Shown here: positions 3,476-64,000 of the stretch, piece by piece
Layout: the number at the start of each line of letters is the position of its first letter
Position numbering within the stretch: position 1 is the first letter of the stretch
Assembly (NCBI RefSeq): GCF_001194135.2
Contig: NC_068986.1
Span: forward strand, 90,562,953-90,626,952
Direction: 5' to 3'
DNA length: 64,000 nucleotides
Source: Octopus bimaculoides
Lineage: Eukaryota
The notes under the pieces: generated by a model
The model's input: the letters and a program-made list of their open reading frames with translations, nothing else
What the model was told of the DNA's origin: nothing
Database searches by the model: none
Made by a program: the position numbers and the translations under genes

Positions 3476-3640
3476 AATATGTGGCTGTGTGGTAAGAAGT
3501 TTGCTTCCCAACATCATGTGGTTCTGGGTTCAGTCTCACTGCGTGGTACCTTGGGCAAGTGTTTTATTATAGCCTCAGGCTGACTGAAGTCTTAGTGAAT
3601 TTGGTAGATGGAAATTAAATGAAGCCCATTATATATATAT
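3476..3640 (+). mobile_element. tRNA-derived SINE family B, 5' part
   Basis: gtggctgtgtggtaagaagtttgcttccc...gggttcagtc...ccttgggcaagtg; matches full copies at 13111-13509 and 29641-30041. Confidence 0.85.
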
Positions 3641-3642
3641 AT

Positions 3643-4166
3643 ATTACATAAAAAAATGTGAGCATGAAAAGTAATATTCTTAAGATTATAAACCTGGAAA
3701 AGTACAGGATAAGTTATTACACATGGAAAAGTATAGGACAATCTATTACTTCTAGTAAAGTAAAGAATAAGAAACTTTTTACTTAAAATATTGCAGCAAA
3801 GAATGCCAATTCTTCTAATTTATCACTCTTTACATTTCTCATCTTTTAAATTTATTGTACAAAACTGTTCAGCTTGACGGATAAAAGTTTATCTAATTAG
3901 TCACTTTTTTCTGTATTTAAGGTAGTAAATTAGCCAAACTCTACTTAAATAAGTATAATGTTATTTGTAAACTATAATAAAATAATTTTTAATAATCAAA
4001 TTTTAATTTTAGCTGCAATATTTTAAGTAAAATGTTTCTTATTCTTTACTTTACTAGAAGAAATAGCTTGTCCTATACTTTTCCAGGTGTAATAACTTGT
4101 CCTATACTTTTCCAGGTTTATAATCTTAAGAATATTACTTTTCATGCTCACATTTTTTTATGTAAT
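3643..4166. mobile_element. MITE/foldback element with ~155-bp inverted arms
   Basis: 3643-3797 is the near reverse complement of 4012-4166; each arm has two ggaaaagtataggacaa-like subrepeats. Confidence 0.7.
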
Positions 4167-6174: not shown

Positions 6175-6408
6175 TCTTATTTCTTTATTGCCCACAAGGG
6201 GCTAAACATAGAGGGGACAAACAAGGACAGACAAAGGGATTAAGTCGATTACATTGACTCCAGTGCGTAACTGGTACTTAATTTATCGCCCCCGAAAGGA
6301 TGAAAGGCAAAGTCGACCTCTGCGGAATTTGAACTCAGAACATAACGGCAGATGAAATACTGCTAAGCATTTCGCCCGGCGTGCTAACGTTTCTGCCAGC
6401 TCACTGCC
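6175..6408 (-). mobile_element. SINE family A, full length
   Basis: Near reverse complement of 44790-45014, including the tail gtgggcaataaagaaataag. Confidence 0.92.
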
Positions 6409-6555
6409 TTCTTTTAGTTTCTGTCTATGAAATCCACTGTCAAGGCTTTGGTCTGTTAGGGGATGTAGCAGAAGATACTTGCTCAAGATGCTGCACAATA
6501 GGAGTGAACTAGAGACCACATGGTTGGGAAGCAAGTTTCTCAACCACACAGCCAA
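6405..6555 (-). mobile_element. SINE family B, 5' part
   Basis: Minus strand ggctgtgtggttgagaaacttgcttcccaaccatgtgg...cttgagcaagt. Confidence 0.8.
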
Positions 6556-8434: not shown

Positions 8435-8580
8435 AGGTGCAGGTGTGGCTGTGTTGTAAGTAGCTTGCTTACCAACTACATGGTTCAAGGTTCAGTCCCA
8501 CTGCATGGCACCTTGGGCAAGTGTCTTCTACTATAGCTTTGGGCCGACCAAAGTCTTGTGAGTGAATTTGGTCGGTCAAA
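8435..8580 (+). mobile_element. SINE family B, 5' part
   Basis: ggtgcaggtgtggctgtgttgtaagtagcttgcttacc...ccttgggcaagtgtc. Confidence 0.88.
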
Positions 8581-12245: not shown

Positions 12246-12865
12246 TCTGTGTGTTGTGTATGCATGTATGTATGTATGTACGTATGTATGTATGTATCGA
12301 TGGATGGATGGATGGTTGTATGCATTATGTTGAACGAATGAGAGGAGTACGCAATGCAACTTGTAGAATATATGGTTTATTGAAGCTTCTATAAACATAA
12401 TTTATCAACTTTAGCCTCTCTTAAAAGTAAACAAAGTGATTACATTTCAATTTTTTTCTTATTTCTCTGAGGACAAAAAGAAAAAAAAATTGGGGTCGAT
12501 GTGTCTGCCTTGTAGTGTTTTGAGAAGTTCATAAAACATTATACTCATTTGTCCTTATAAATAACAATAAAGTACATTTGTACCTTTTAGCTATTTAAAG
12601 ACTAGGACACAGTTTAACTAGCTCGTCTAATTTGCATTATAGTGCATGCGCTGAAATGTAAAGTATACGTTCTTGTGATAAACATACAGTTTTATACTCG
12701 ATGTGAAAAATAATGCTGTTATACTACAGTTTCTGCTTTTAGCTTGCAGTTTTTCATTAAAATATCTTTGTTACAAACAGTCTAGTTATATCACTAATTT
12801 CAAACAACATGTTATACATTACTGACAACAGAGAGATTAAAGAGCATCGAAAATAGAATTTGCAA

Positions 12866-12948
12866 TTAACAGCCTTTCAGTTCTTTAGAAGCCATTTCAT
12901 CCAAGATCGGTTCCTTCCAGGTTGCGTAAATGTGCTGCATCGTGCAAA
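12866..12948 (-). CDS. Candidate terminal exon of Cys-rich gene A ((V)CTMQHIYATWKEPILDEMASKELKGC*)
   Basis: Strong acceptor TTGTCTTATTTTCCAG; the phase-1 frame matches the upstream exon and runs to TAA, followed by UTR-like sequence. Confidence 0.55.
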
Positions 12949-13110
12949 CTGGAAAATAAGACAATATTTAAAAATGCAATTCTAATTAATTTGTTCAGCA
13001 TAGAAAGGAATATTGATCACAATGAATTAGAGTCTCATGAACTAAAACAGCGGAAATTATCGGGGATTATGATAAAAACAAGGGAGATAATTAAAAAATC
13101 CTGAACATTT

Positions 13111-13314
13111 GACTGCGGCCATGCTGGAGCACCGCCTTTAGTCGAGCAAATCGACCCCAAGACTTATTCTTTGTAAGCCTAGTACTTATTCTATCGATCT
13201 CTTTTTGCCGAACCGCTAAGTTACGGGGACGTAAACACACTAGCATCGGTTGTCAAGCGATGGTGGGGGGGGGGNNNNNNNNNNNNNNNNNNNNNNNNNN
13301 NNNNNNNNNNNNNN

Positions 13315-13352
<38 letters not shown>

Positions 13353-13509
13353 GACGGGCTTCTTTCAGTTTCCGTCTACCAAATCCACTCACAAGGCTTT
13401 GGTCGGCCCGAGGCTATAGCAGAAGACACTTGCCCAAGGTGCCACGCAGTGGGACTGAACCCGGAACCATGTGGTTGGTAAGCAAGCTACTTACCACACA
13501 GCCACTCCT
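13111..13509 (-). mobile_element. SINE family B, full length (internal N gap)
   Basis: Reverse complement of 29641-30041. Confidence 0.95.
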
Positions 13510-13699
13510 GGGTAGGTTTTTGATTATTTTCCCTCTTCACTGGAAGGAAATTTGAAATCGAAGGTTCATCACTTATATTATTAATTTTTATCATTGGATC
13601 ATATATTTTAATCATATACCTCATACCTATTGAATCAAATGTTTTACATTCGAGTCCCTAGATTGATTCGAATTTTTTTTAATTAACTAATCCCGTAAT

Positions 13700-13925
13700 T
13701 TGTAATTGAACGGTAGAGTGCCCATCCAGACTATTTGATGTTGCTGTGCACCGCTGGTCACAATGCTCTTTCTTATATTGTAGCTTTCGCATGATACTAC
13801 TCTTCTGGATAGCAGGTTTGCAGTTGAATAGACGGGAAGTGAAGTGTTTTGCTCAAGAACACTACGCACCACTGGTCTAGGAATCGAAACCACGACTATT
13901 CGATCATCCTTAGTGCAACACCTGA
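13700..13925 (-). mobile_element. tRNA-derived SINE family C-like fragment
   Basis: Minus strand ggtttcgattcct...gtgttcttgagcaaaacactt, a core shared with 56243-56458. Confidence 0.7.
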
Positions 13926-14108
13926 ACCATGAAGAATTTCAGTCGGACGAATCGATCCTAGTCTTTCTTTTCTTAAAACCTGGTACTTGTTCTGTTAGTC
14001 ACTTTTGCGAACCACCAAATTTTGGGGAGCTAAACACACCAACACGAGGGACAAATACAGACGCTAAACACACAAACACACACAGAAAGTATGCAACAGT
14101 TTACTTAC

Positions 14109-14243
14109 CCAAATTTTTGTCTACACGAATCCGCGCAATAGTCTTCTTCGTAATGCTGCAGGTAAATGTTACACAATGATTCTTGAAAATACCAGGCAGT
14201 TTATCACCATCTTTCAAGCAATTTCCTTTATTATCTTTACAAA
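14109..14243 (-). CDS. Internal exon of Cys-rich gene A (CKDNKGNCLKDGDKLPGIFKNHCVTFTCSITKKTIARIRVDKNL)
   Basis: Acceptor CGTGTTTTCAG, donor G|GTAAGT, 135 nt phase1-phase1, 44 open codons with 4 Cys; similar to the exon at 58388-58507. Confidence 0.75.
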
Positions 14244-14314
14244 CTGAAAACACGATCGAAAATTATCGTTATGACCTGCTGAGATATGCACTTGCAAAAA
14301 TGGATAGCGATCTC

Positions 14315-14389
<75 letters not shown>

Positions 14390-15299
14390 NNNNNNNNNNN
14401 NNNNNNNNNNNNNNNNNNNNNNNNNNNNNNNNNNNNNNNNNNNNNNNNNNNNNNNNNNNNNNNNNNNNNNNNNNNNNNNNNNNNNNNNNNNNNNNNNNNN
14501 NNNNNNNNNNNNNNNNNNNNNNNNNNNNNNNNNNNNNNNNNNNNNNNNNNNNNNNNNNNNNNNNNNNNNNNNNNNNNNNNNNNNNNNNNNNNNNNNNNNN
14601 NNNNNNNNNNNNNNNNNNNNNNNNNNNNNNNNNNNNNNNNNNNNNNNNNNNNNNNNNNNNNNNNNNNNNNNNNNNNNNNNNNNNNNNNNNNNNNNNNNNN
14701 NNNNNNNNNNNNNNNNNNNNNNNNNNNNNNNNNNNNNNNNNNNNNNNNNNNNNNNNNNNNNNNNNNNNNNNNNNNNNNNNNNNNNNNNNNNNNNNNNNNN
14801 NNNNNNNNNNNNNNNNNNNNNNNNNNNNNNNNNNNNNNNNNNNNNNNNNNNNNNNNNNNNNNNNNNNNNNNNNNNNNNNNNNNNNNNNNNNNNNNNNNNN
14901 NNNNNNNNNNNNNNNNNNNNNNNNNNNNNNNNNNNNNNNNNNNNNNNNNNNNNNNNNNNNNNNNNNNNNNNNNNNNNNNNNNNNNNNNNNNNNNNNNNNN
15001 NNNNNNNNNNNNNNNNNNNNNNNNNNNNNNNNNNNNNNNNNNNNNNNNNNNNNNNNNNNNNNNNNNNNNNNNNNNNNNNNNNNNNNNNNNNNNNNNNNNN
15101 NNNNNNNNNNNNNNNNNNNNNNNNNNNNNNNNNNNNNNNNNNNNNNNNNNNNNNNNNNNNNNNNNNNNNNNNNNNNNNNNTATATATATATATATATATA
15201 TATATTAACCATAAGGACTCACTTTTACATGTATATAAATATTCAATCCTGAATATTTGCTGGTGATTGTGTGTGTGTGTGTGTGTGTGTAAAAATAGG

Positions 15300-16270
15300 A
15301 ATAGAACTAAATGATATAGACGCTACCTCATATAGGCCAGGAATGGAAGCACATTGTACGCCGTTCCTAGAAGAAATCGCAACCTGATTGTTTTCATTTT
15401 CTACAGCACGTTCCATGATAGCTTCCCTTGCCCATCTGTCCCACATGTCACCCATGCACATTGGCTTCTTAAACTTGATTGAAGTAGTGGCACGCTCCTC
15501 CTCTTCCATATAGCAATATCCTTGGTCACAACATCTCAAATGTTCTTGTTTAGGCAAATTATCCATTGGTTCTGCATGTCCTACTCTTGTCCTTGTGTCT
15601 TTCACCGCAATTACCAATTTTTTCTTTTCTAAGGTGATCTCTGTCACCTTATCTTTTTACACATACCATTCCATTCCTGACAACATCTGGACTAGCGACA
15701 AGAACAATATCAGAATGTAAAAAAAAATCTAATGTTTTGTCTTATCAGTGCATGGGAAACTGACCCGTAAATATTTATTCAGTCAACACAGACAACTTAG
15801 GGAGTCTTTTTTTACTCTTCTAACCATGTTGAATGAAGCTCCAAATCATTTGAGCAGGCTCAGGAACAGACGCGTTTATGAATTAATTCAGTGGCAGGAA
15901 CTTTGACATCCTTCTTGTCAGCAAACCATAAGATATTTCACTCCCTTTATTTTGAGTTAGAATGTCGGGCTTAACTAATCGAACGACGATATCATCTCCT
16001 TTCTTATGCATCTCTCTATTAAGCCCCAGTCCTGCTTTGCTGCCCCGTTTCCCAACGATCTCTACAATATGCTGCTCAACTATACTCTGGGATGCTCTGG
16101 CAATATTTGTTAAACTTGTATGATGTATCACTGTTACCTGGGGTACCTTTAGATCTCACCTTCGCAAACATCTCATCTCCTTTGATTTTGAAATCTGAAC
16201 GGTTGAAATGGATCTCAGGCGCTGGTGAGAACAACTCCTCAGTGAATAGATGTTGGGGGACACCATGAAG
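15300..16270 (-). mobile_element. HERO/NeSL-type (R2 group) non-LTR retrotransposon RT fragment, internally deleted
   Basis: Broken frames give KVRSKGTPG..SYK..KYC, YGLLTRRMSKFL..N.FINASV, MIWSFIQ and VVCVD*INIYGSVSHALIRQNIRFF (RT motif region). Confidence 0.7.
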
Positions 16271-16385
16271 AGTTTCTCAATTTATTTTTTCTTGCCAAAT
16301 ATTAAGAAAAAGACCATCACGAAATATAATATCTGCTTCAACACACGATTTCACATCAGGAATCTTGCAAAACAAATTCATAATC

Positions 16386-16424
<39 letters not shown>

Positions 16425-18491
16425 CACACGCACGCACGGGCGCACAAACACAAACGCACACACACACACACACACATACATGTGTGTATGTGTGTGTATA
16501 TATATATATATACATACATACTATATATAAATGTATATAAATATATATATACATATATCATACATACATATATATGAATGTAATAAAAACAGACGAATGA
16601 GTTGTTCGGTATTGCTACAATTGTGTTGTTGAGAGTATTTATTGTGACGTATGCATAGTACAACCAACTATATGCATAATACCCATAAGATTACGTAATA
16701 TGTCACGCAACTCCGCAAGTTGCTAAATAAACAAGCGAGCAATGACACGGTGATTAATCAACAGATCAACAACAATGAAAATTTCTTGTCAGATTTACCA
16801 ACATTTAAGAAATGTAAAGCGGGTTTTGATCAACGAAAATGGATAACAAGGTAATGCTGTAAAAGAAAAAACGGTTAAAGTTATTTATATTCTATCGATG
16901 TCGTTCAACTTAGCAACTTCATTCATCAAAGCTTGTAGTAGCAGAACGTGTTTGTATACCGGCACCAAGCGTGATATCTGACTCAATCAAAATATGTTGA
17001 AAGAATAGCCGCCGACCCAATTCATAAAAAACTATTTACAGTGTTGTATTGTTTTGAAGTTATCTACATTAAAAATTGACCTGGTTGATAAAATCCAGTG
17101 TTACTTATTCACTCAATTAACCTTGATAAACGTGCTTCGATAATTAATACTGAATCAATAGAATATTAGCTTTAATCAATGGAGGATCAGTTAATTATAA
17201 TTCAGGAAGAATGGCTTAAAGAAAGCCGTAGTTTAACGAAGTTCCCTCGAAATTTAAGAGAGGGAGGGAAAAGAAGAATATGGAGGAAAAAGAAAAGAAA
17301 TAATAGAAAGGTAATACAATAAATTAAATAGAATGACTGGTCAACACATTGACAGGAAGGTGATATTGGCATAAACGAATAATTATGCATCGTTGACTAA
17401 TGAAAGTATTATAGGCAATAATCGGTGCTAACTTAGATATATGTCAATAAATTTGCGCACTTATTTTAGTTAGATATCGAGATTTATAAACATCAGTTAT
17501 TTAGCAGCAGAGAAGTTAGGAGCTGAATGCCCTAAATAATAAAGAAGGAAAACAGAACAGAAAATAATGAAAAACTATTGACCCACCGTTTCTACTGATC
17601 AATATTGTCACAATATTATTTAGAATAAAACTAGCCAAATAAGATAATACATGTTCAGTAGATCGCTAACACACTACTATAAATATTTAAAACTATTGAG
17701 AGTAATGAGAAAAAGTTAGAGAGCTTATAAAAATCATAAAGAATTATAAAGGCCATACATGCTAATTAATGGTAAATTAATTTGTAGGACTAAAACAAAT
17801 TATAAAGAATTTTAAAGGGAGATAATGCAAATATTATTCGTATATCGTCTAAGGCTAGAAGTAAATAGAAAAGGTTAAATAAATTATATTAAATATCGAT
17901 CAAGTCGATACATTCTTGATATTAGTTGTTAGAACTAAGGGAAGGCAAAAATAGCTTAAATATGATCAGTTACAAACATAATAGCATAGAAGATGCTATC
18001 TAAAATTATCCATGAATCTTATTATTAGTGATAAGGTCTATATTACAGGGATATATACATACGCATCTGATACTCAGGAGAGACTTTATAGAGTCGATTT
18101 AAAGCATTAGAAAGTACTTTGGATAGAATGCAGGCATTTCATCCTTAATTCATCTGACCTATTAATAACACCACCCGTGTATTTTAAGAGTTTCGCTTCG
18201 TCTCTTCTTTTAAATGTATGGCGATGATTACGTCATCTTGATGTAAAAATAGAAGTGGATCCCACGTAAGTGAAAGCACATTGATTAATTTTAACGTTAC
18301 ATTTATATATTGTATTTTTATCCTAGCGGACATTGAGATTTATTCCTCCAGTTACATAATATAGTTACTGTTGAAGTGCAAATATTATGGGTTACATAAT
18401 CTGCACCAATATACGGTACCCAATCATAATCAGTAGAATTGTTATGCGTGGTAACCACTCCATCGACAATATATTACCAAAATGCATATGC

Positions 18492-18532
<41 letters not shown>

Positions 18533-20602
18533 GTGTGCCGGTGATATGAATTCGAGCAACAATGACGTAGAAAAGTATATTACATGGCATACAAGATAAA
18601 CTCTTCATCTATTGTGAATTACCTTCCCTTCTAGGGAAAGTAAACAAGTACCTAGCTTCAGTGGTAACTGACTGAATGAGAAGAGTAAATTTTCCCAAGC
18701 AATAACAAATCTCCAGAAATTAATGCGCCGTTAAAGATGTTGCAACAAGTGCGAAATTCATATCTGTCGCAGTTGCGGTCGCTTCTGAAATTATTTCATT
18801 TCACCTAGCTCTGAAGTATAGAGTGTTTTATAACACAATACGTGTTTAAAAAGATTTTTTTCCGGGCACAAACTGCCGCTTTTGCTGTTTCAACTATACA
18901 GATATATATTTTGTATGTATAGAATTGCTTCTATTACATAATTTGAATTTGTTCTGCTTATGCTAGTGTATAGTTTATATACAAGTTGTATATACTTCAG
19001 AGTAGCTGTTTCGATTTTGTTTCGGGGCTGAGAGGAGTACATGAAATGATAAACTACAATAGCAGCGAAATACGTGACTGTCGACCTCACGGTCACTTCT
19101 GGGACGGTTTCGTTTCCCCTAGCTGTGAAATATATTATGTGTTTTTTTTCACACAATACGTCTGTAAACAGATTTTACACAGACGAAAACCGCAGGCTCT
19201 GGCGTTTCACTCACACACACACACATACATAAATTAAGCTTGTTGTATAGATAGCACACACACACACACACACACACATACACACACACACATGCATACA
19301 CGCACGCACACACATATGTATATAGTGAACGAATGAGATCCAGAGATTCTCAGTATAGATAACACTTTTATAGCGCTCAAATGGTTTCAACTTAATGAGG
19401 GACCATTTCTGCGGGAGTGAAGAGTGGCTATAAGAGGAATGAAATGGAGCAGATATGGAGGCTATCATACGGTAACGAAATTAAATATAACAGCTTGTGT
19501 GTGTGTGTGTGTGTGTGTGTGTATCTATTTATGTATACATGCAAGCAGAAAGAAACCAAAGACTGAAGATTTTCAGTTGATGAATATTTATATATAAATA
19601 TATAGATATCTATATATTAATAGATCAAACTTACACAAAGTACAAACGGCAGCGAATATTAAAGTGGAGAAATTAAGATGTTTTAAGTCCACCAACTGAG
19701 GGCTCGGAGGTCCATTTTAATGTTGGTAGATGTAGTTCACTAAAATATGCAGTCAGTAATGGAAACAAATAGGCATTGGATAAATCGAGCCACCATCATC
19801 AGAGTAGAAAAAAAAAATTATATTTTAGATCATGATGTTGAAAAGTTTAAAGGTGGGATCACCTTTAAACCAGAACGTACAATATTTTCCCCGCCTATAA
19901 ACATGCCATCAATCCACTTCCTACGAAACCATATGTAAGGTCGACCGTGCGAACTCAAAAAGGAGAAATGGTGACGAATGGAAAAACAGGACTCCTTTTA
20001 TTTAAACGTGTCACACGGTCGAACACACAAATATTATATCTATGATGATATACTAATAATATGTCATGCTACGATAACATAGATGACCAGTAATGAAAGA
20101 CCACAACCGTATAAGATGAATAACAGAGATATTTATTGTGGCATTAAAGTGTACGTCTGTGTGAGAGTGTGAATGCGACATATAAGAACATAATCAAAGA
20201 CAGGCCGTCGTACAAAGAAAAGTGTGTATGTGAGTGATACATGTGTGTGTACGTGAGTTATTACAGCAGATGGAAAGAGAGTCAATAACACGTGAGCATT
20301 TATACCAGTTCTTTAGTACACAATAGTATGAGTCTGTATGTGATTCTTGTTATNNNNNNNNNNNNNNNNNNNNNNNNNNNNNNNNNNNNNNNNNNNNNNN
20401 NNNNNNNNNNNNNNNNNNNNNNNNNNNNNNNNNNNNNNNNNNNNNNNNNNNNNNNNNNNNNNNNNNNNNNNNNNNNNNNNNNNNNNNNNNNNNNNNNNNN
20501 NNNNNNNNNNNNNNNNNNNNNNNNNNNNNNNNNNNNNNNNNNNNNNNNNNNNNNNNNNCATAGAAAGTCGTGTAGACGCTGGTGGTGAAGAGGCTGCTTG
20601 GT

Positions 20603-20700
20603 AGTAATCGTGTTGGTCATGACGATGATGCTGGTTAGTAGTAATCGTAGAATCGTGTTGGTCATGACGATGATGCTGGTTAGTAGTCGTAGACTCGTGT
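20603..20700. repeat. 45-bp tandem duplication
   Basis: aatcgtgttggtcatgacgatgatgctggttagtagt occurs twice, with a partial third unit. Confidence 0.9.
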
Positions 20701-20819
20701 TGCTGATGTGGCGACGGCGGTGGTCATCGTTGGCTGGACGAAGCTGTTGAAGTGGTCGCTGACTGATTGTTGCTGCTGCTGTCGTGTGGTACACGGAACA
20801 GTCTCTATAGAGAAACTGG

Positions 20820-21000
20820 ACCGAGACGAATTTGGCCGCCGAGTTAAAGCTATTTATAACACACTTTCGGCTCCCGAAGGCTTCAGAAACATACTCTATC
20901 ACGTGACCTTATTAGGGGCCGTGATTGGTCAGTTTGCGTTCTGGCGGGAACGGTTCGAAGAAGTTGCCGCTTCGAATATTAATCAGTCACGTGATGACAA
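20820..21000 (-). promoter_or_regulatory. Candidate Pol II promoter pointing leftwards
   Basis: CpG-rich; TATAAATA (20851-20858), CACGTG E-boxes (20900-20905, 20988-20993), CCAAT (20924-20928), E2F-like GGCGGGAA (~20943-20950). Confidence 0.45.
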
Positions 21001-22489
21001 GGAATGGGTTCCCTGCTACGCTCGCGTTTGTTTATATTTAAATGAGAAGATTGTATGTAATGGCGATAGTAGTTTTGTATCTAATGGCGATAGGTAGTTT
21101 TGTATGTAATGGCGATCGAGGTGTTAGTTTCACTACACATATTTTCGATCGAGTGTGCATAACTGAAATTTTTCATGATAGTAAATTCAACCACTTCTGT
21201 ATATTCATCAATTTATAAGTACCAGGAATAGTTATAAAATCATAATTTCAACAATTCAAGTCGCATATAATACAAGAAATCTAGAAAGTGGTAAATAACT
21301 ATTCAAGAAATTATAAAAGCGAAACCTGTAGAAAACTATTTGGAATACAATTATGTTAAGGAACATTTTAACTTTTACTTACACGTTTCCAAAATCGATA
21401 TTTTGTTTTTAACGCATATTAATTTCTTACATTCATACAATGTTCTAAATATGCCAAACATATCATTACAAATGCACATTCCGTATAAGTAACATCCGTT
21501 ACATACTGTAAAAGAAATAAAAGGCAAACATTATGTCTATGCTTGGAAGGTGAATAGGCATCTATGATTAGCTTCAGGTTTTGTATACTTGAAATGCTGG
21601 TGAATTGAATTCACTCAAATATGAACTTAGATTTCTGGATGTCAGTAATGTTAAAAGGAAATGTAGAGAAAGTTCGAGAGGGATAAAATGCGCGATAGAT
21701 ATGAGAGAATGTAATGTATAAGGTATCAGGAATTTAAAACGCGAGTAAAAGGACGGAAGTAAAATGGGCAGTAAATTTAGAAAGACAGATTTAGAAAGAC
21801 ATAGATTTGGGAATATTTTTTACATTAATCTTTTTTAGAAGACTTTGCTTTGTAGTGAGTGGGCCAACGGTCTAACAAAAAAAAATTATTATAGACATGT
21901 GTAACGGCTTTAGAAGGGTTACAAAAAAGACAAAAGGGAAGGTGATCCTGTGTCTTTTCTTGGATTGGCGACGTCTGTCGCTTTAAACTAATATCCTTCT
22001 CAACGTAGTCAAGTTTGCTAAGATACCATTATACAGTTGGAATTTTAAAAATTATATTTTCGAGTACAATTACGTCTTGCAAGCTTAGAACTCCAGTGAT
22101 TTATTATTGAGTCATAGTTTAAGCTTATTTCCATTTCCTTTAAATTCAGTACAATATCTGGAGATTTTAATATATTGGAGTGGACGGATAAACGGATAAA
22201 GAAGAGAGAGAGAGAGGTGGGCGGAAGAGAGATTATGGTTCTTATGTTAGTATCGTAGTATAAAGTTTGCAAGTTCAGTGGTATAGATATTATGATAGGA
22301 GTTTAAGAACATTGAAACATACCCGCAGGTTGATATTGAATCGCAACATCAATGGGAAGGACTAGGAGTGAAAGCAAAACTTTTGAAAATGTATTATACA
22401 TCTGTAAGTAAAATAGAATAAACACACGTAAAATATATACACGCCTTTTCATTTAATAAGGATTATGCGTTGATTTATTCTTTTATTCT

Positions 22490-24037: not shown

Positions 24038-25630
24038 AGAGGTTAGTAATAAAGTCACAGTTTTGACTTGGTAAAAAAAGTTACAGGAAAAATGTTACAA
24101 TTAATTTATGGGGGCTGGTAATAAAGTCACAAGAAAAAAGTCAAAATGCCATCATATTTATATATGTTGGTATTACATGTATGAGAAAAAAAAAAAAGAT
24201 TCACGTTTTGTTCATATCTTAAGCACAGTAAGGTAATCAAACAAAAAAATTTAAGTCAGCATTTTTTTGAAAGTACATGGCATGTACAGATTGAAAACAA
24301 CTTACATAATATCGTGGCATTACATGTATATTCAACGTTTTTAATGATGATGATTAAGACAAATATTCCAGCCAACGCCACGAAGAAATTCTGTCACAGT
24401 CTTGTGGTCCCCCTGTCGAGCAACACACAAGTTGTGAAGGCGTTCTTGTAGCTGCACATAGCGTCGACGAGCTCTTCTTTGAGTGGGGTTGCCAACAGCG
24501 TCCTGCTGGATAATGGTGCTCACTGTCGCTTCTTCACGTTGAAACTATGCAATGACGCGCCAGAGTGAAGGATAGTAGTGAGGTTCAGGAATTTATTATT
24601 CCACCCTTCACAGCTGGCGTTGTTGTTCACGGCATTGTTCATGTTGTTCACAAGCGTTGTTGTTCATGGTGGCGTCCTGCACATTCTGTAGGTGAGGGGC
24701 AAACATTGGTTGAATGTGACGCATTCTCAGAGGTATCAGAGTATCACCTGACATGGCAACTGGAGCCACTAACATTAAGTACAATCGAAGTACATGAGCA
24801 ACTCCTCGGCTTCAAGTGGATCTTGTGGAATGACAGTTTTGAGGTATCTCATACTTTCATTAACGTCTTCAAGGGGCAAAAAAGCTAGAGCATCAATCAT
24901 GTCACAAAGCAAACGAAACTCAGCATTGGTATTTTAATGTGTTCCCAAACCCAGTTCCTGGATCTTACGCCAAGTAGACTGCGCAAGATGATAGAAACAA
25001 CCTTTGTTCTCTACGTCGGAGCCAAACATTGCAAGAACAGCTCTCAATACACCATCTTCAAAATCAGTCACCACGGTTTGCACATTAATAGAATAGCTTA
25101 GGTCTGCATACTTATCAACTATAGCCTGAAAGAGTTCTTCGTAGGTGGCACGAGTCTTGTTTGAAAGAAGAGCATACACTGAAGTAACAGATGTAAGACC
25201 GAAAGGGACACGAATGGCATAGATCTATTTGAAAATATTTGGAACCTAGCAAAGTTGCCATCCATATATAGAGTATGAACTCCAGCAAAGAGTCTGAGGC
25301 CATCACAAGTACCATACACTAGAATGAGGTTTGCATTTGGTCCGTTATCATAGAGTAAGAACTCTTCGGGATTAGGGCCAACTGTTATAGTATAGACAGT
25401 AGGAAGTTCATTTAGATTTTTTAGCAAACATGGTACAGGAAGAGTAGGCTGTTTGTTGCGCAGAGTTCGTGACTCATTAATTTACCATCAGTTCTGCATA
25501 CATCTTTATACAAATTGATTGACATATTAACCTTAAAACAGTGAGAATTCTACAGTTAGCCTTTCTATTAAAGAAAGACGCAGAAATAGTGCTAACGTTG
25601 CCTTCTTTAAAATTATTTTTTCCTGTGACT
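24038..25630 (-). mobile_element. Mutator-like (MULE) DNA transposon remnant
   Basis: LYMDGNF, YALLSNKTRATYEELF, VVTDFE, GCFYHLAQSTWRKIQELGL (MULE transposase domain); subterminal aaaaaagtcaca repeats at the left end and a matching piece near 25620. Confidence 0.9.
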
Positions 25631-29640: not shown

Positions 29641-30041
29641 AAGCGCAGGAGTGGTTGTGTGGTAAGTAGCTTGCTTACCAACCACATGGTTCTGGGTTCA
29701 TTCCCACTGCGTGGCACCTTGGGCAAGTGTCTTCTACTACAGTCTCGGGCCAACCAAAGCCTTGTGAGTGGATTTGGTAGACGGAAAACTTAAATAAGCC
29801 CATCGTATATATGTATATATATATATGTGTGTGTGTATATGTTTGTGTGTCTTTGTTTGTTCCCCCAACATCGCTTGACAACCGATGCTGGTGTGTTTAC
29901 GTCCCCGTAACTTAGTAGTTCGGTAAAAGAGACCGATAGAATAAGTACTAGGCTTCCAAAGAATAAGTCCTGGAGTCGATTTGCTCGACTAAAGGCGGTG
30001 CTCCAGCATGGCCACAGTCAAATGACTGAAACAAGTAAAAG
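29641..30041 (+). mobile_element. SINE family B, full length
   Basis: tRNA-like head with B box gggttcatt, core ccttgggcaag, internal (TA/TG)n, tail ...gactgaaacaagtaaaaga. Confidence 0.95.
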
Positions 30042-30780: not shown

Positions 30781-30821
<41 letters not shown>

Positions 30822-30995
30822 GACATCTTCTTTCTGTTTCCGTCTACCAAATCCACTCACAAGGCTTGGCTCATCCCGGGGGTGGTGGTGGATATAGTGA
30901 AAGACACTCACTAATGATGCCCGCAGTGGGATCGAATCTAGAACTATATTGGTGAGAAGCAAACTTCTTAACACACATCCACGCCTCCGCCTGCT
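30781..30995 (-). mobile_element. SINE family B, 5' part
   Basis: ttccgtctaccaaatccactcacaagg...gcagtgggatcgaa. Confidence 0.8.
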
Positions 30996-33036: not shown

Positions 33037-33071
<35 letters not shown>

Positions 33072-33790
33072 TCACCTTCCTTCTGGATTATTCGTGGGTC
33101 AAAGGGGCATGCAACATCAACTATATAGCATATGTGGTGCACCTTGGCCACCACTACTAGGTCCGGTCTGTTATGCTCTAGCACCTGATCTGTTTGGACT
33201 GGGAAATCCCAGAGGATTTTGCTAGTCTCCGACTCTGCCATTCCCTGTGGTTTGTGTTCATACCACGTCTTGCCTCTCTCTAGCCCCCACTTTTCGCACA
33301 GTTTCCAATGTAACATTTTCGCTACCTGGACGTGTCGCCACAACTTGTATTGGTTTTGGGAAAGTCTAGGGCATTTGTTCGTGATATGGGCAATGGTTTC
33401 ATCCACTCTGTTACAGATGCGGCACAGCGGAGACACTTGCTCATTCCTCAGGTTGACCCACCACTTCGTGGCCAGAGCTTGGTCCTGCGCTGCCAGTATA
33501 GTGCTCTCGGTCTCTTTTTTTAGGGTTCCTTTCACCAGCCAACCCTACCTATTTTTTCCAGCAACTTCTGTTGGCTGTGCCTACATGGAATTGATTGCGT
33601 AGTGCCTTCTGGCGAAATTTTTCTTCATGCCCTCTTTGTACTTCTTCCTTTGTTTTCCCTTTTTTCTCTGCTTTCAATACTCCCTCGTTCCTAACTATCA
33701 CTAGCAAGGTTTCCTTACTTTGGGCTAGGTATCTCATTAAGCTCTCGAGTTCGATTTGACCTTTCCTCCTTTCTGGGTCAATAAAATAAG
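32736..33790 (-). mobile_element. R4/Dong-type non-LTR retrotransposon 3' half (CCHC + restriction-like endonuclease)
   Basis: ETESTILAAQDQ, CRIC...ETIAHITNKC, ILWDFPVQTD...HNRPDLVVV...IVDVACPFD...EKIDR. Confidence 0.92.
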
Positions 33791-34229: not shown

Positions 34230-37200
34230 AACATTCATCGCTTCCACATACCAGACAGCAGCAAAAACAAGAACTTTATTATGAACAGAACAATAGCAAA
34301 AAACCCCTCCTCAAGACATGCCCCTTCTTTGTTCGGATCAGTCGGACATGTCCTGCAGTGAGGGGAACGGCGAAAAGCCTAAATTGCTAAAAGTCGGCAG
34401 ATCTAACAAGGGAAAAAAGAATTAAAAACATACCGATATCAATACAAAAATCTAGCAGGTATGATCAAATACCACTCCAACAGCAGCCTTACAAGCACCG
34501 TTGACAACATGATCCCCATCACAACCATCACCACCACTCCTTTCACAGTCGCCATCATCACAATCACAATTCAGTTCACACATACAACTCTCAGATCGTA
34601 CATCCCAACACCAATAAAATTCAAACATCATTAACTACACAGCAATAAACACGAACAATAAAGAACTGATGGAACACATATATAACCATACAGACATCAC
34701 ACACACCGATTTTATCACACCAGCAAACAACATACCAACACACAAAATTCGTCCAAACATCACAAAACGCATACAATGTAATACAACTAAATATTCCGAA
34801 GGAGTAAGGGCTTTCAGGAGAAATATCAAAAGACTGTACAAAGAACTGATCGTGGAAGCAAACGATTGGGAGGGGACATCCTTCTCAAAGTCACCAATAA
34901 AATTACTGTAAGTGACATTTTTCTCATCTATTCTTTAATCTGATATACCCCTGCTTAAGATTGGCAGTATAAAAGTATGTGGTCTAGGATCATCTTGGAA
35001 AGAAGGTCATCTATTCAACGACCTCAGGTCACCAAGTGTAGATGTTGTAGTTATCAGTGAAACTAGACTTTCCGACCGACAAGCGTTCATGTCCATTTTC
35101 GGTGGGTATGAGATCTATTTATCTCCATATCAACCAGAACGGGGTGGGGGTGGAGCTGGAGTGTTGTTCCTGAGAGATCTGGGTCTCAAGAATGTAAGAT
35201 GGCGGTCCTGGATGTGCACAGCAATGACGAGGGTGCCCCAGACTGGTGGCTGTTTATGCTCCAACAGGAGCAGGATAACCAGATAACAGTGGTGTGGTGG
35301 ATCAGGTTGAAAGGGCTGAAGACAGACACTTTTTTCTTTGGCCAAACCATCATAAATTTTTTCAAGTTTCACCTGGAAAGGAAAATGAGGGTAGAGAGGA
35401 GAATGCTACCTCAAAGCAATTCTTTCAAAAGGTGGGTGAATGTAACGCGCAGTATGCGCCTCTAGATCGAGAGATGATGAAGAGGACAGGATACTTGCCT
35501 TAAAGGTCAGGGTGATCGTGGTTTCTGTGGGGTTTTCACGAACAACTTCTCGACTTTTATAGTGTTAGTGAGCGACTGGAACGCCGTCTAAGAGCAACGT
35601 TTGAACTGTGTGGGGCTAGTGAATAGAAGACGGGGTGGGAAAGCCTCGCAAATCTTCCCAACTGTTTGGACGGGTATCGACTAGATTTCCCGAATGTGTC
35701 AAAGTGGACCGCACCGGATCATCCAGGTCGTATCTAAACAGAGCATTTTATAGGCCAGTAGATAAGGATAGTATAAGGTTGTCAACTTTTCAAAAACGCC
35801 CACCACATAGGCTTAGATAGGCTTAGAAGGCAAGAACCCTGTTACCGGAAGCTGAACGCGTAATTACCCGGGTACCAAGGTTACAGAGACCAGATTAAAT
35901 AATTAGTGAAGCGGGCGTTGAAGTGGGCAACCCTCAATAACAAATGGTAGTTTGCCCTGAAAAGAACAATTAGAGTGGAATCAGTTAGGTTTAGTAATGC
36001 ATTAGTGATAGGAAGAAATAAAAACAGAAGGGAACTTAATTAGAGGCGCTTAGGAAAGGCGTTGCAACAGACGTGCTGGCCGCGAGATTGACCCTGGACC
36101 AATTCTTCAACGCTAAACACGAAGGTTGCATAGTCAGAGCTAAGATGCGTGTTCTAAGACAAGAAGGAAAGAAAGCCAGAGTGGTAGAGGCGCAACGTGT
36201 CAACAAAACTACAATTCGGTCTTTGGTGGACCAAAATAGATCACATTATTCCAGCCCGAGCAGATGAGTGCGGCATTTCAGCAGCGCTTCGCCCAATGAA
36301 GTCTAAGATGGACTTCATTGCCTACCACAACTTTTGGTGGGGGTAGGGGTCGGAGTGATGCGAAATGCCGATAACAGACGCAGAAATATGGGATGCGATG
36401 ATGGGTTGCACAGGGAGAAAAATCGCCTGGTTTGGATGATCTGTCCTATGAGATTTATTTTTATAAGACAGATTTGCTTGATGGCCTTTTAGCAGATATC
36501 TTCCACAACTGGCAGTAGAACGAGATAATTCCTAATTCTGTGAGTCAAAGAGTGGTGGCGCTGCCAAAAAAGGACCCAATTAAAGGGCATCAAATAGAAA
36601 ATGTTAAGCTCATAACGCTGCTGAACGCAGATTTCAAATTTGGCCGAGATGTTTGCAAAGAAGTTGGCGCTTGTCGTCGAGGAACTGATTTATGATATTC
36701 AAACATGCTCAGTCCCAAGTAAATCTATCTACGATAACCTCTACCTCATGCGAGAAATCATAGACAGGGTGGGTAAAGAAGCTAGCATGGGTTGGATCAG
36801 CCCAAAGCCTTCGATACAGTCGACCACCAATACTTGGCGGCTGTTTCCACGGCGGCCGGTTTCGGCCCCGTTTTCCGTGACTGGATTGCCGCAGTGTACA
36901 GCAACATCTGCTCGGTAGTTTGGGTAAATGGTTACTTGTTGGAACCATCCAGCACCATGCATTCAGAGCATCAAGAGTGTCTGCTTTCGTCTCTTCTGTG
37001 TGTCCTGGCTCTAGAACCACTATTGCAGAAACTGGGGGCGTTGAGAGGTATTCCATGCGAACTAGGATGTTGGAGAATAGTGTCGGCATACACAGACGAC
37101 GAGGTCACTGTCATAGTGTCGAACATCAAGTACATAGACCTGGTCGGCACTGCTCCGAAAAATACGAGGCAGTGACAGGAGCAAAAGTTAACCAAAAAAT

Positions 37201-54073: not shown

Positions 54074-54750
54074 AGATTGTACTGTAATGCAAAGAAAAGA
54101 GAGCTGCAAGTATTCAACCACGAAATGCCTGTGTCAGTGAAAGTAAGAGACGGCAAGTTGCTGAAGGTAGTTGAAAATTTGAAATACCTTGGTGCGTGGA
54201 CACAAAGTACTGAAAAAGACATCGTAGCAAGGAAAGCTCTTGCCTGGGGCGCATGCCATGAATTGAGAAAGGTATGGAGTTCAAAGTTAGCAAGGAAATT
54301 GAAAGTGGGGTTGTTTCTGGCAACAGTGGAGTCTGTTCTTCTTTACAGGGCTAAAACATGGACGCTCACTAAAGTATTGAAGAAGCAGTTGGACGGTTGT
54401 TGTATGAGGATGCTTAGAACGGCACTCAATATCTCCTGGAAGAGTCATACAACAAACGTTGATTTATACCAGGGGCTAACAAAAGTAACATTGAAAATAC
54501 AGCATAGAAGAATGAGGCTAGCTGGACACTGCATCAGACATACCAATGAAATTGCTAAGAAGCTAGTGCTCTGGCAACCAACAGAAGGAAGAACCAAGAG
54601 AGGAAGGAGGAAGACGACCTATATCGACAAGTTACTGGAGGATACTGGTATGTAAGGGGTACAGGAGCTGAGGACCATTATGGAAAATCGAGATGAATGG
54701 GGGAAATGTGTAAAAACAGTCTTGGGGTGTCATATGGAACGACCTAGATA
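54074..54750 (+). mobile_element. RTE-clade LINE 3' end (RT C-terminal region)
   Basis: LKYLG, LFLATVESVLLYRAKTWTLT, RRMRLAGHCIRH, RGRRKTTYID; 192-aa open frame 54077-54655. Confidence 0.88.
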
Positions 54751-57152: not shown

Positions 57153-57210
57153 ATGCATGCATTTTCGAAAGTTTTGTTTTTATTAGTCCTTCCCATTGTT
57201 GTGAATTCAG
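57153..57210 (+). CDS. Signal-peptide exon of Cys-rich gene B (MHAFSKVLFLLVLPIVVNS)
   Basis: Acceptor TTTTACTTACAG directly before ATG, 19 codons with a hydrophobic core, donor CAG|GTATGT in phase 1. Confidence 0.75.
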
Positions 57211-57578
57211 GTATGTTTCAATATTCTTAGACAATTAAATTTTATCCGAAACACTGAACATTGCTGATTTTATATGACAGAAGAATGAAGACATAAACTC
57301 TAGCTTCTTCACATTCCACTCTGATATTTAAAAGTCTGCAGATATGGCACTGAATTTTAAAGAGGTCGAAAAAACGTTGATTCAATAAAAGAAATAATTC
57401 AAATTTCAGCAGACTTCTTTTGCCCTAACAAAACATAATTATGTACCTATATATAGACTCGCATCCTGACATGCTTGACTGCATTGAAAAGAAAATTACT
57501 CAAAAGTTAGATACGATCTTCGCAAAGACACCGATTCATTTTTACGTTTAGTCCTCTGTATTTTCTTCCAGACCGAGT

Positions 57579-57950
57579 GGAGGCGCAATGGCCCAGTGGT
57601 TAGGGCAGCGGACTCGCGGTCATAGGATCGCGGTTCCGATTCCCAGACCGGGCGTTGTGAGTGTTTATAGAGCGAAAACACCTAAAGCTCCACGAGGCTC
57701 CGGCAGGGGATGGTGGCGAACCCTGCTGTACTCTTTCACCACAACTTTCTCTTACTTCCTGTTTCTGTTGTGCCTGTAATTCAAAGGGTCAGCCTTGTCA
57801 CACTGTGTCTCGCTGAATATCCCCGAGAACTACGTTAAGGGTACACGTGTCTGTGGAGTGCTCAGCCACTTGCACGTTAATTTCACGAGCAGGCTGTTCC
57901 GTTGATCGGATCAACTGGAACCCTCGACGTCGTAAGCGACAGAGTGCCAA
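57579..57950 (+). mobile_element. SINE family C, full length, intronic
   Basis: tRNA-like head tggcccagtggttagg...ggttccgattccc, CpG-rich body. Confidence 0.88.
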
Positions 57951-58387
57951 CATTTCTTCCAGACCTATTATGCACACCTTACAAAACGAAAAGATCGTCA
58001 ATAGGTCGTTAACCAAATATAAAACAGTGTCGTATCAATTTATGTTCGTAAATTGTATCTGCAAAAATTATTCCTCATAGTTCTATGTTCTATATTCAGT
58101 TCTATACTAATTTTCAGCTCCTTTTTTCTTGTTTGAAATTCTACACAGTTTTATATATAATTTTTTTCGATATTGCAGTCACGTATTATATCCCTCCAAA
58201 CAATTTTCTTCGTTACTGCCTGGACATTATTTACTAAAATTCAATGTTTAATTTAATATTCGACTAAACTAGAATTATTGAAATCTCAAGTAAAAGAAAC
58301 ATACACTAAATACAGACACCAGCTCAACCCCTCAAACAAAAAAAATAGAGTCTCACTATTTTCTTTATAACTATATTTCTGTTGCAG

Positions 58388-58507
58388 AATGTAACGGATG
58401 TCCCTTAGACGGAAAATGCATTTGTGGTGGGAGTGGTATATTTAGATCAATGTATGACTGTAAGAAAATAACTTGTCGTAGGAAAACGATCAAGATTCGG
58501 GAAATCC
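58388..58507 (+). CDS. Second exon of Cys-rich gene B ((E)CNGCPLDGKCICGGSGIFRSMYDCKKITCRRKTIKIREI)
   Basis: Acceptor TATTTCTGTTGCAG, donor C|GTAAGT, 120 nt phase1-phase1, in frame with the signal exon; 6 Cys. Confidence 0.78.
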
Positions 58508-63812: not shown

Positions 63813-64000
63813 TTCACTCCCACCCACCTGCCCTCTCTTGCTCTAACACCTGCTTCCACTCTTCACATCTACTCACCTTCTCCCTTCCACCCTCTACCTT
63901 CATCGTACCCCTCCATCGTTACCCCACGCCTACACATCCCAACTCTACCATCCCTATACATTCCACATTCTACTCCCACATACCCCGCTACTACCCCCAC

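What the first reader, a model, noticed from the sequence alone, without database searches (positions are those of the whole stretch)
12866..14243. Second cysteine-rich spliced gene (gene A) on the minus strand
Seen: a 135-nt phase1-1 exon (CKDNKGNCLKDGDKLPGIFKNHCVTFTCSITKKTIARIRVDKNL) and a phase-compatible terminal exon ((V)CTMQHIYATWKEPILDEMASKELKGC*), giving 6 Cys. The start/signal exon was not found; it may lie in the N gaps, and a 26-nt candidate exon at 15223-15248 has a GTGAGT donor. Inference: the C-x-D-x2-G-x-C start loosely recalls VWC/beta-microseminoprotein-like modules, unproven.
Basis: partly seen in the sequence, partly recalled or inferred. Interest (0 to 1): 0.72.

Follow-up and report, generated by a model that had tools for sequence, protein, structure and literature searches.

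The report
3' half of annotated octopus gene
The two cysteine-rich exons are real, but they are not a separate gene: they are the last two coding exons of an already annotated, uncharacterised Octopus bimaculoides gene (LOC106869794) that encodes a small secreted 12-cysteine protein from an octopus-only family.

Summary
The 40-N gap lies inside the intron between them, within a dispersed repeat. An ungapped copy of that repeat spans the gap colinearly, so no coding frame is affected.

They are not a second gene. An exhaustive HMMER search found octopus proteins with the architecture signal peptide, module D1 (CNGC...C.C), module D2 (CKDNKGNC...) and a C-terminal tail. That protein is identical to RefSeq LOC106869794 isoform X2. 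Isoform X1 adds MPRYY from 24320-24306. So the missing signal exon lies about 8 kb upstream, not in the N gaps, and the 26-nt candidate exon has no support.

Paralogues and an ungapped O. sinensis locus share the same exon order and the same phase-1 introns. All 12 Cys are invariant. dN/dS is about 0.6-0.7 in one orthologue pair.

The beta-microseminoprotein and VWC ideas fail every test run here: Pfam, PDB profile search, hhalign, cysteine pattern and Foldseek. AlphaFold models reproducibly but weakly resemble tandem fibronectin type-I module pairs. The function is unknown; the likeliest role is a secreted, disulfide-locked binding protein or ligand.

The parts
24306..24320 (-). First coding exon of isoform X1 (CDS part only): ATG CCA CGA TAT TAT = MPRYY, phase-0 donor GTAAGT. 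Isoform X2 does not use it.
   Evidence: The annotated gene range starts at L001:10001, which is window 24320.
22323..22401 (-). Signal-peptide exon (79 nt): MYNTFSKVLLSLLVLPIDVAIQYQPA. Acceptor ttacttacag, phase-1 donor gtatgt. It holds the start codon of isoform X2.
   Evidence: The family signal-peptide HMM hits here at E=1.2e-10.
21383..21505 (-). D1 module exon (123 nt, phase 1-1): (V)CNGCYLYGMCICNDMFGIFRTLYECKKLICVKNKISILET, 6 Cys, donor GTAAGTAA.
   Evidence: D1 HMM E=1e-21.
14109..14243 (-). D2 module exon (135 nt, phase 1-1). The junction codon T|TT gives Phe, and the exon carries 4 Cys.
   Evidence: It is the only D2-type exon in the window (HMM E=4e-25).
12866..12948 (-). Terminal coding exon (83 nt including TAA).
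   Evidence: It is the only CT-type exon in the window (HMM E=5e-13). The annotated gene ends at 12866.
13275..13314 (.). The 40-N assembly gap, inside the D2->CT intron and within a ~400-nt dispersed repeat (13106-13510).
   Evidence: one colinear alignment crosses the gap onto the ungapped inverted copy at 29646-30024.
14244..21382 (-). D1->D2 intron, 7139 nt as assembled. It contains the 791-N gap (14390-15180) and the 205-N gap (20354-20558), so its true length is uncertain.
   Evidence: The same intron is about 3.0 kb in the paralogue L002 and about 5.0 kb in the ungapped O. sinensis locus L003.
57153..58507 (+). 5' part of a second family member ('gene C'): signal exon 57153-57210 (MHAFSKVLFLLVLPIVVNS) and D1 exon 58388-58507. 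Its D2 and CT exons are not in the readable window.

Best explanation
The finding is the 3' half (coding exons 4 and 5) of one five-exon gene on the minus strand. That gene is Octopus bimaculoides LOC106869794, at CM046606.1 about 90.576-90.587 Mb, which is window 24320-12866.

Shown:
- The CDS 24320-24306 | 22401-22323 | 21505-21383 | 14243-14109 | 12948-12866 translates exactly to the RefSeq 144-aa isoform X1. Starting at 22401 it gives the 139-aa isoform X2.
- The protein consists of an N-terminal hydrophobic signal-like segment, a 6-Cys module D1, a 4-Cys module D2 and a 2-Cys tail. Each is encoded by its own exon, and the exons are separated by phase-1 introns.
- It belongs to a multi-copy family that the searches found only in Octopus. 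Most annotated copies are spread over ~170 kb of the same chromosome, and one lies 16 Mb away.
- The family has an invariant 12-Cys spacing and otherwise diverges fast.

Inferred:
- The precursor enters the ER, the signal peptide is removed, and the 12 Cys form six disulfides. This gives a basic, ~113-aa (~12.9 kDa) all-beta protein.
- Its two modules resemble a tandem fibronectin type-I pair.
- Such a rigid, elongated beta scaffold most likely acts outside the cell by binding a partner, perhaps through beta-strand addition as FnI pairs do. It would serve as a secreted ligand, cue or binder. The partner and the tissue are unknown.
For: Identity to the annotation:
- The spliced reader peptide hits P0001 (LOC106869804) at E=4.3e-13, and also P0002 and P0004. 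All have the order signal-D1-D2-CT.
- The merged model is 100% identical over 100% of its length to P0009, LOC106869794 isoform X1. The 139-aa form is exactly isoform X2, XP_052824911-913.
- The exon-by-exon translation equals P0009.
- The window is the same assembly as L001, and the annotated gene ends at 12866.

Exon inventory:
- The window holds only one D2 exon and one CT exon. Both lie downstream of a D1 exon and a signal exon on the same strand.
- No other signal exon exists in readable sequence.
- The junction codon T|TT = Phe sits on a conserved aromatic position, Y/F/Y.

Conservation elsewhere:
- Paralogue L002 and the gap-free O. sinensis locus L003 have the same four coding exons, the same phase-1 introns, and no signal exon inside the D1->D2 intron.
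- For the paralogue, two independent annotation sources (UniProt A0A0L8HM80 and RefSeq) give the same protein.
- All 12 Cys are invariant.
- In the orthologue pair the ORF, the Cys and the splice sites are all kept, with dN/dS 0.67.

Structure:
- Two AlphaFold models are all-beta, with core pLDDT 73-91 and 87-92.
- For both, the only consistent Foldseek hits are FnI module pairs, with probability up to 1.0 and TM per target 0.44-0.60.
Against: - No transcript or RNA-seq junction was seen directly here. The protein look-ups returned only the genome record, with no intron-less contigs.
- RefSeq models can be partly homology-driven.
- The D1->D2 intron holds 996 unread bases, so extra exons there cannot be strictly excluded.
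- In the sister locus LOC106869796 the RefSeq model joins two tandem units and skips an intact CT exon. Annotation in this cluster is therefore not infallible.
- The FnI resemblance is weak (Foldseek E 0.009-0.9, none <=0.001, rmsd 4-6 A). It rests on a 5-sequence alignment and has no sequence-level support.
- The signal peptide was judged by eye and by hydropathy only.
- There is no evidence at all on tissue, partner or function.
Confidence: 0.88

Rival explanations
1. Gene A is an independent gene encoding only D2+CT, and its own start/signal exon is hidden in the 791-N gap (14390-15180) or is the 26-nt exon at 15248-15223.
For: - 791 bases immediately upstream are unread. At 0.15-0.95 kb from the exon, the gap overlaps the distance at which family signal exons sit from the next exon, 0.8-1.2 kb.
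- A GC-richer, CpG-rich island with CCAAT and TATAAATA motifs lies in the same orientation at 20559-21100, inside the big intron.
Against: - No family member has D2 directly after a signal peptide. In every case D2 follows D1.
- The ungapped O. sinensis locus has no signal exon in the D1->D2 intron.
- In the 26-nt exon the only ATG is followed by TAA, and the region is not similar to the signal exons; 60-82% of random window segments score as well.
- All three RefSeq versions, including the older 181-aa model, join D1 to D2.
Confidence: 0.04
2. The RefSeq model wrongly fuses two decayed tandem units. One unit would keep only signal+D1 and the other only D2+CT, with the missing exons lost or hidden in gaps. 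This is what may have happened in LOC106869796.
For: - In L004 the 216-aa model joins unit 1's D2 to unit 2's D1 and skips an intact CT exon.
- The 7.1-kb intron is the longest of its kind seen here and contains two gaps.
Against: - The window's minus strand holds exactly one of each exon type, in the canonical order, with matching phases and an aromatic junction codon.
- Two units that each lost exactly the complementary halves is unparsimonious.
- The gaps of 205 and 791 N are too small for the ~1-kb-plus exon pairs, unless their estimated sizes are badly wrong.
Confidence: 0.04
3. The exons belong to a silent or decaying gene copy (pseudogene) that is annotated but not expressed.
For: - No transcript contig was found.
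- No O. sinensis orthologue of this particular copy turned up.
- The family evolves with weak constraint: dN/dS 0.6-0.7, and dN is about equal to intron divergence.
Against: - The ORF is intact across five exons.
- All splice sites are canonical and all 12 family-invariant Cys are kept.
- RefSeq lists four transcript-derived protein records for the locus.
Confidence: 0.04
4. The protein, or its D2+CT half, is an extremely diverged beta-microseminoprotein (MSMB) or VWC-type module. It would be related to the squid beta-MSP-like egg-capsule pheromone.
For:
- MSMB-like genes exist in molluscs, including cephalopods, and evolve very fast (PMC3268785).
- A squid beta-MSP acts as a contact pheromone (cited in PMC4500399).
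- A VWF C4 domain appears at Foldseek rank 22.
Against: - No Pfam PSP94 or VWC hit at E<=10 for any member.
- No PDB profile hit.
- hhalign probability 0.3-0.5%.
- 12 Cys with a different spacing, no CC dipeptide, and no CxxCxC...CCxxC pattern.
- No MSMB structure in the top 50 Foldseek hits of two models. The VWF C4 hit has E=1.2 and probability 0.21.
Confidence: 0.04

Closest known systems
RefSeq 'uncharacterized protein LOC106869794' isoforms X1/X2, Octopus bimaculoides (XP_052824910; XP_052824911-913)
   Same: Identical. The five window exons translate exactly to the 144-aa X1. The four-exon form equals the 139-aa X2.
   Different: Nothing differs in sequence. The record carries no function, domain or family name. 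An older model (XP_014771141, 181 aa) has a different, signal-less N-terminus.
Octopus paralogues LOC106869804, LOC106869796 and LOC128248170 (O. bimaculoides) and LOC118763715 (O. sinensis)
   Same: They share the signal-D1-D2-CT architecture, the 12-Cys spacing, the exon boundaries and the phase-1 introns. All the O. bimaculoides copies are on the same chromosome.
   Different: They are only 34-48% identical to this gene. LOC106869796 is annotated as a doubled D1-D2-D1-D2-CT protein. This gene's tail is 5 residues longer.
Tandem fibronectin type-I (FnI/F1) module pairs (e.g. 8-9FnI in 3EJH/3GXE; 2-3FnI in 2CG6/3CAL/2RKZ/2CKU)
   Same: These are the best and only reproducible structural matches for two independent AlphaFold models. 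Both are two consecutive small disulfide-stabilised beta modules, with ~85-92 aligned columns, Foldseek probability up to 1.0 and TM per target 0.44-0.60.
   Different: - E-values are only 0.009-0.9, rmsd 4-6 A and identity 7-18%.
- There is no Pfam fn1 hit and no PROSITE FN1 pattern.
- The spans are 6 Cys in D1 and 6 in D2+tail, instead of 4 per FnI module.
- FnI modules are, to my knowledge, a chordate feature, so this may be convergence on a simple fold.
Beta-microseminoprotein (MSMB/PSP94, Pfam PF05825), including molluscan MSMB-like genes and the squid beta-MSP-like pheromone
   Same: Both are small, secreted, cysteine-rich, all-beta, two-part proteins that evolve fast with conserved Cys. 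Both occur in multi-copy gene families. A short local motif is shared (PMC3268785).
   Different: This family has 12 Cys rather than 10, with a different spacing. It has no sequence, profile or fold match to MSMB, and each module is encoded by its own exon.
VWC / single-VWC domains (Pfam PF00093)
   Same: Both are cysteine-rich extracellular beta modules. The N-terminal VWC subdomain is itself FnI-like (my own knowledge).
   Different: There is no CxxCxC...CCxxC signature and no Pfam hit. The only structural hit is VWF C4 at E=1.2, probability 0.21.

Membership tests
Octopus LOC106869794-type 12-Cys secreted family (unnamed) | Architecture in one polypeptide: signal peptide, then D1 (C-x2-C-x5-C-x-C-x12-C-x4-C), then D2 (C-x6-C-x14-C-x4-C), then a tail with 2 Cys | tested here: met
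   The alignments and Cys spacing are identical to the paralogues. Each module's HMM hits exactly once on the window's minus strand, and the hits lie in that order.
Octopus LOC106869794-type 12-Cys secreted family (unnamed) | One exon per module, with phase-1 introns at conserved positions | tested here: met
   The boundaries and phases are the same in the window, in L002 and in L003.
Beta-microseminoprotein (MSMB/PSP94, PF05825) | Match to the family profile | tested here: not met
   No Pfam hit at E<=10 for the peptide or for 5 family members. No hit of the family profile to any PDB chain, a set I believe (not verified here) includes MSMB entries such as 3IX0 and 2IZ3. hhalign probability 0.3-0.5%.
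Beta-microseminoprotein (MSMB/PSP94, PF05825) | [quoted passage not shown] | tested here: not met
   This family has 12 Cys with spacing 2,5,1,12,4,11,6,14,4,17,24. Human MSMB has spacing 15,18,2,1,6,0,13,8,13.
Beta-microseminoprotein (MSMB/PSP94, PF05825) | Fold: an N-terminal Greek-key domain plus a small C-terminal beta domain | tested here: not met
   No MSMB chain appears among the top 50 Foldseek PDB hits for either of two models. The models have only moderate confidence.
VWC domain (PF00093) | Ten Cys with C2xxC3xC4 and C8C9xxC10 motifs, and a profile match | tested here: not met
   The regex is absent, there is no CC dipeptide, and there is no Pfam hit.
VWC domain (PF00093) | VWC fold | tested here: inconclusive
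   VWF C4 (6FWN) appears only at rank 22, with E=1.2, probability 0.21 and TM 0.32, and for one model only.
Fibronectin type-I module (PF00039, PROSITE PS01253) | Sequence signature or profile | tested here: not met
   No Pfam hit at E<=10. The PROSITE-type pattern, written from memory, is absent in all members.
Fibronectin type-I module (PF00039, PROSITE PS01253) | Fold: a beta-hairpin plus a three-stranded sheet, arranged in tandem pairs | tested here: inconclusive
   These are reproducible top hits for two models (probability 0.9-1.0, TM per target 0.44-0.60), but no E-value is <=0.001 and rmsd is 4-6 A.
Fibronectin type-I module (PF00039, PROSITE PS01253) | Four Cys per module, forming 1-3 and 2-4 disulfides | not testable with these tools
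   Model coordinates are not returned, so disulfide pairing could not be read. By count, D1 and D2+tail carry 6 Cys each.

The most novel reading that the evidence does not exclude
An octopod-restricted, fast-evolving gene family encodes secreted 12-Cys proteins built from two FnI-like beta modules. This would be a fold otherwise associated with chordate matrix and plasma proteins. The proteins would act as species-specific extracellular cues or binders, for example a contact pheromone or reproductive, mucus or saliva ligand, functionally analogous to the squid beta-MSP pheromone but unrelated to it. The family would then be an independent invention, or an unrecognisably diverged branch, of the FnI/VWC-type module.
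Probability: 0.12. Interest if true: 0.55.

Novelty: already known. Interest (0 to 1): 0.22.

Why it matters
For the scan, two 'cysteine-rich genes' on the minus strand collapse into one annotated gene. The missing start exon is accounted for without invoking the gaps.

For biology, interest is modest. LOC106869794 belongs to an uncharacterised family that the searches found only in Octopus. It has no Pfam domain and I found no literature on it. The family has an invariant 12-Cys scaffold, a high dN/dS and a possible FnI-like two-module fold. Families like this are typical candidates for lineage-specific signalling, reproductive, defensive or secretory functions in cephalopods, but nothing here points to a specific role.

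Tried and rejected
1. I first took gene A's exon to be a diverged paralogue of the Cys exons at 21505 and 58388, because of a shared GIF[KR]...C-x4-C...KTI motif. Shuffle tests gave p=0.49 (A vs B) and p=0.026 (A vs C). hhalign of D1 against D2 gave probability 0.2%. They are different modules of one protein, not duplicates.

2. I looked for a remnant signal exon or 5'UTR homology just upstream of the 791-N gap (15181-15340). MAFFT suggested one, but 60-82% of random window segments score as well. Rejected.

3. A scan for an ATG + hydrophobic + phase-1 donor exon across 14244-20300 found only microsatellite artefacts, while recovering the true signal exons of both family genes.

4. Word-indexed protein searches with the 71-aa peptide and with gene C found nothing. 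Only the exhaustive HMMER search and the merged query worked.

5. In one search, P0003, P0005 and P0006 are long internally repetitive proteins without the Cys pattern. I treat these hits as repeat-inflated and spurious.

6. Cuttlefish egg-case proteins (SepECPs) were considered. They are large proteins with 50-55 Cys and different motifs, so they are unrelated.

7. L001 was hoped to fill the gaps, but it is the same assembly with the same N runs.

8. No paper mentions the LOC identifiers, the UniProt accessions or characteristic peptide strings.

9. ARAGORN finds no tRNA in the intron repeats.

10. My first exon table used 21379 as the end of D1, which is the ORF end rather than the donor. 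Translation failed. I corrected it to 21383.

11. I could not scan L005, because its DNA was not delivered.
Full report
**What the window is.** The window is AT-rich (36% GC) eukaryotic DNA with 14 N runs, (TG)n and (TA)n microsatellites, and dispersed repeats. It is 100% identical, N runs included, to Octopus bimaculoides assembly GCA_001194135.2, chromosome record CM046606.1. Window position w corresponds to record position 90,562,952 + w.

**The observation.** On the minus strand, the 135-nt exon at 14243-14109 has the acceptor ttttcag and the donor GTAAGT, and is phase 1 at both ends. The terminal exon at 12948-12866 has the acceptor ttttccag and ends in TAA.

**The gap.** The 40-N gap (13275-13314) is in the 1160-nt intron between the two exons. 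Both of its flanks belong to a single ~400-nt dispersed repeat. One colinear alignment, 13106-13510 against 30024-29646 (E=1.5e-124), crosses the gap onto an ungapped inverted copy. At the gap position that copy has only G-run/CA/TA low complexity. No coding frame crosses the gap, and paralogue alignments show no residues missing at that exon junction.

**First searches.** The spliced 71-aa peptide had no Pfam hit, no credible PDB hit (one chance-level match at E=3.6) and no word-index protein hit. Scanning the window for Cys-rich open frames turned up two related exons, at 21505 (-) and 58388 (+). Each is preceded by a clear signal-peptide exon, at 22401-22323 (-) and 57153-57210 (+). Shuffle tests (p=0.49 and p=0.026) and later hhalign (probability 0.2%) do not support that.

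**The decisive result.** The exhaustive HMMER search gave the answer. The peptide hits octopus proteins P0001 (E=4.3e-13, 48% identity, aligned across the exon junction), P0002 and P0004. These proteins have the order signal peptide, D1 (ECNGC...C.C...), D2 (CKDNKGNC...C.TFTC) and a C-terminal tail (VC..H.Y..W...C).

**Merging the exons.**
- A database search with it returned P0009, 'uncharacterized protein LOC106869794 isoform X1', at 100% identity and 100% coverage.
- The 139-aa form is exactly isoform X2, XP_052824911-913.
- X1's extra MPRYY comes from 24320-24306.
- The exon table 24320-24306 | 22401-22323 | 21505-21383 | 14243-14109 | 12948-12866 translates exactly to P0009, and every intron is AG/GT. 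An earlier table with a wrong D1 end failed.

**Independent support for the D1->D2 join.**
1. Profile HMMs of the signal peptide, D1, D2 and the tail, run on the six-frame window, find SP twice, D1 twice, D2 once and CT once. The minus-strand set lies in the canonical order.
2. The junction codon T|TT = Phe falls on a conserved aromatic position, Y/F/Y.
3. The paralogue LOC106869804 (L002, about 150 kb away) and its O. sinensis orthologue (L003, no N at all) have the same four coding exons, the same phase-1 introns, similar GTAAGT/GTGAGT-type donors, and no signal exon inside the D1->D2 intron.
4. For the paralogue, UniProt's genome-paper model and RefSeq agree on the protein.
5. The older RefSeq model of this gene has a different N-terminus but the same D1-D2-CT joins.

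No signal exon exists in readable sequence upstream of 14243 apart from the one at 22401. The region next to the 791-N gap, including the 26-nt candidate, is not similar to family signal exons above chance. That candidate's only ATG is followed immediately by TAA.

**The protein.**
- All 12 Cys are invariant, with near-invariant spacing: 2, 5, 1, 12, 4, 11, 6, 14, 4, 16/17, 19/24.
- The mature part is about 113 aa, about 12.9 kDa, with pI ~8.8.
- AlphaFold models of this protein (mean pLDDT 70; core 73-91) and of the paralogue (mean 77; core 87-92) are all-beta outside the disordered signal segment.
- For both models, the only consistent Foldseek PDB matches are tandem fibronectin type-I module pairs: 3EJH, 3GXE, 2CG6, 3CAL, 2RKZ, 2CKU and 1QGB. 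These have E 0.009-0.9, probability up to 1.0, TM per target 0.44-0.60 and rmsd 4-6 A.
- This resemblance is reproducible but weak, and it has no sequence-level backing.

Beta-microseminoprotein and VWC were tested and not supported.
- No Pfam hit at E<=10.
- No PDB sequence-profile hit.
- The cysteine count and spacing differ, and the VWC motifs are absent.
- No MSMB chain is in either Foldseek top 50, and a VWF C4 domain appears only at E=1.2.

MSMB's defining features were taken from PMC3268785. A squid beta-MSP-like contact pheromone exists (cited in PMC4500399). That makes the idea attractive, but it does not make this family a member.

**Evolution and distribution.**
- In 1.84 billion representative proteins, the only credible hits are from Octopus.
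- O. bimaculoides has at least LOC106869794 (90.576-90.587 Mb, -), the partial 'gene C' in this window (~90.620 Mb, +), LOC106869796 (90.678-90.702 Mb, -), LOC106869804 (90.739-90.746 Mb, +) and LOC128248170 (106.76 Mb).
- Between O. bimaculoides LOC106869804 and O. sinensis LOC118763715, the frame, the Cys and the splice sites are all conserved.
- For that pair dN/dS = 0.67 (mature part 0.59), with dS = 0.11. dN is about 0.07, roughly equal to the intron-1 divergence of 0.068. The counts are small (Sd 8.5, Nd 22.5).
- This is the pattern of a conserved disulfide scaffold with rapidly changing surfaces.

**Mechanism.** The gene structure and protein identity are shown. Secretion, six disulfides and a two-module FnI-like scaffold are inferred from the sequence and the models. 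A role as an extracellular binder or ligand, possibly binding by beta-strand addition as FnI pairs do, is inference by analogy only. Tissue, partner and function are unknown. No paper mentions the locus, its paralogues or their peptide strings.

**Verdict.** The exons are already annotated as the 3' half of LOC106869794. The MSMB and VWC idea is not supported. The residual interest lies in the uncharacterised octopus-only family itself.

Noticed in passing
window 57153-57210 (+) and 58388-58507 (+): A second family member ('gene C') has an intact signal exon (MHAFSKVLFLLVLPIVVNS) and an intact D1 exon, both about 72% identical in DNA to those of LOC106869794. No D2 or CT exon follows in the readable window, which has a gap at 62022-62932 and ends at 64000. 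It matched no database protein, so it may be unannotated or truncated.
   Followed up: partly
window 20559-21100 (minus-strand orientation), inside the D1->D2 intron: A unique GC-richer island (47% against 36% for the window; CpG o/e 1.34) carries CCAAT, two CACGTG motifs and TATAAATA. These are followed by an ATG with a short ORF and a ~30-nt tandem repeat that runs into the 205-N gap. It has no copy elsewhere in the window or in L002, and its ORFs have no Pfam hit. It could be a nested promoter or an inserted retro-copy; this is unresolved.
   Followed up: partly
window 21382-21375, 14108-14101 and 58508-58501; also L002 (D1, D2) and, with GTGAGTAA at D2, L003: Every D1 and D2 exon donor read here is GTAAGTAA (GTGAGTAA at D2 in O. 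sinensis L003). If the intron were retained, the frame would run 'x-K-stop' two codons past the exon. This may simply be consensus donor plus AT-rich sequence, or it may act as a fail-safe stop.
   Followed up: no
L004 (LOC106869796), 10001-33928; intact CT exon at L004:18227-18319: This locus holds two tandem units: SP-D1-D2-CT, then D1-D2-CT with no signal exon in readable sequence. The RefSeq 216-aa model joins unit 1's D2 to unit 2's D1 and skips an apparently intact terminal exon (ECTLQHIYAGVQKYVGDELKYC*). This is either a genuine doubled isoform or a merged annotation.
   Followed up: partly
window 13106-13510 and 29646-30024 (inverted); partial copies at 3481-3644, 6408-6554, 8440-8572 and 30798-30986: A ~400-nt dispersed repeat with an internal microsatellite. 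Several assembly gaps in the window abut (TA)n or (TG)n runs of this kind. ARAGORN calls no tRNA in 12800-14300.
   Followed up: partly
window 36792-37175 (+), 33056-33535 (-) and 54077-54655 (+): Fragments of non-LTR retroelement ORFs: RVT_1 at E=1e-4, zf-RVT at E=4e-5 and DUF6451 at E=8e-5. All are below Pfam's gathering scores.
   Followed up: partly
L002 against L003 (LOC106869804 against O. sinensis LOC118763715): The orthologue pair has dN/dS 0.67, with dN about equal to intron divergence, yet all Cys and all splice sites are kept. The signal-peptide end is the most changed part and has a one-residue indel.
   Followed up: yes
database result: No O. sinensis orthologue of LOC106869794 itself was returned; only its own cluster and the LOC106869804 cluster came back. 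This copy may be species-specific, unannotated in O. sinensis, or missed by the word index.
   Followed up: no
L005 25232-26907 (near LOC128248170, CM046606.1 ~106.77 Mb): Another small called gene (148-aa product) lies 8 kb downstream of the distant paralogue and could be a further family member.
   Followed up: no
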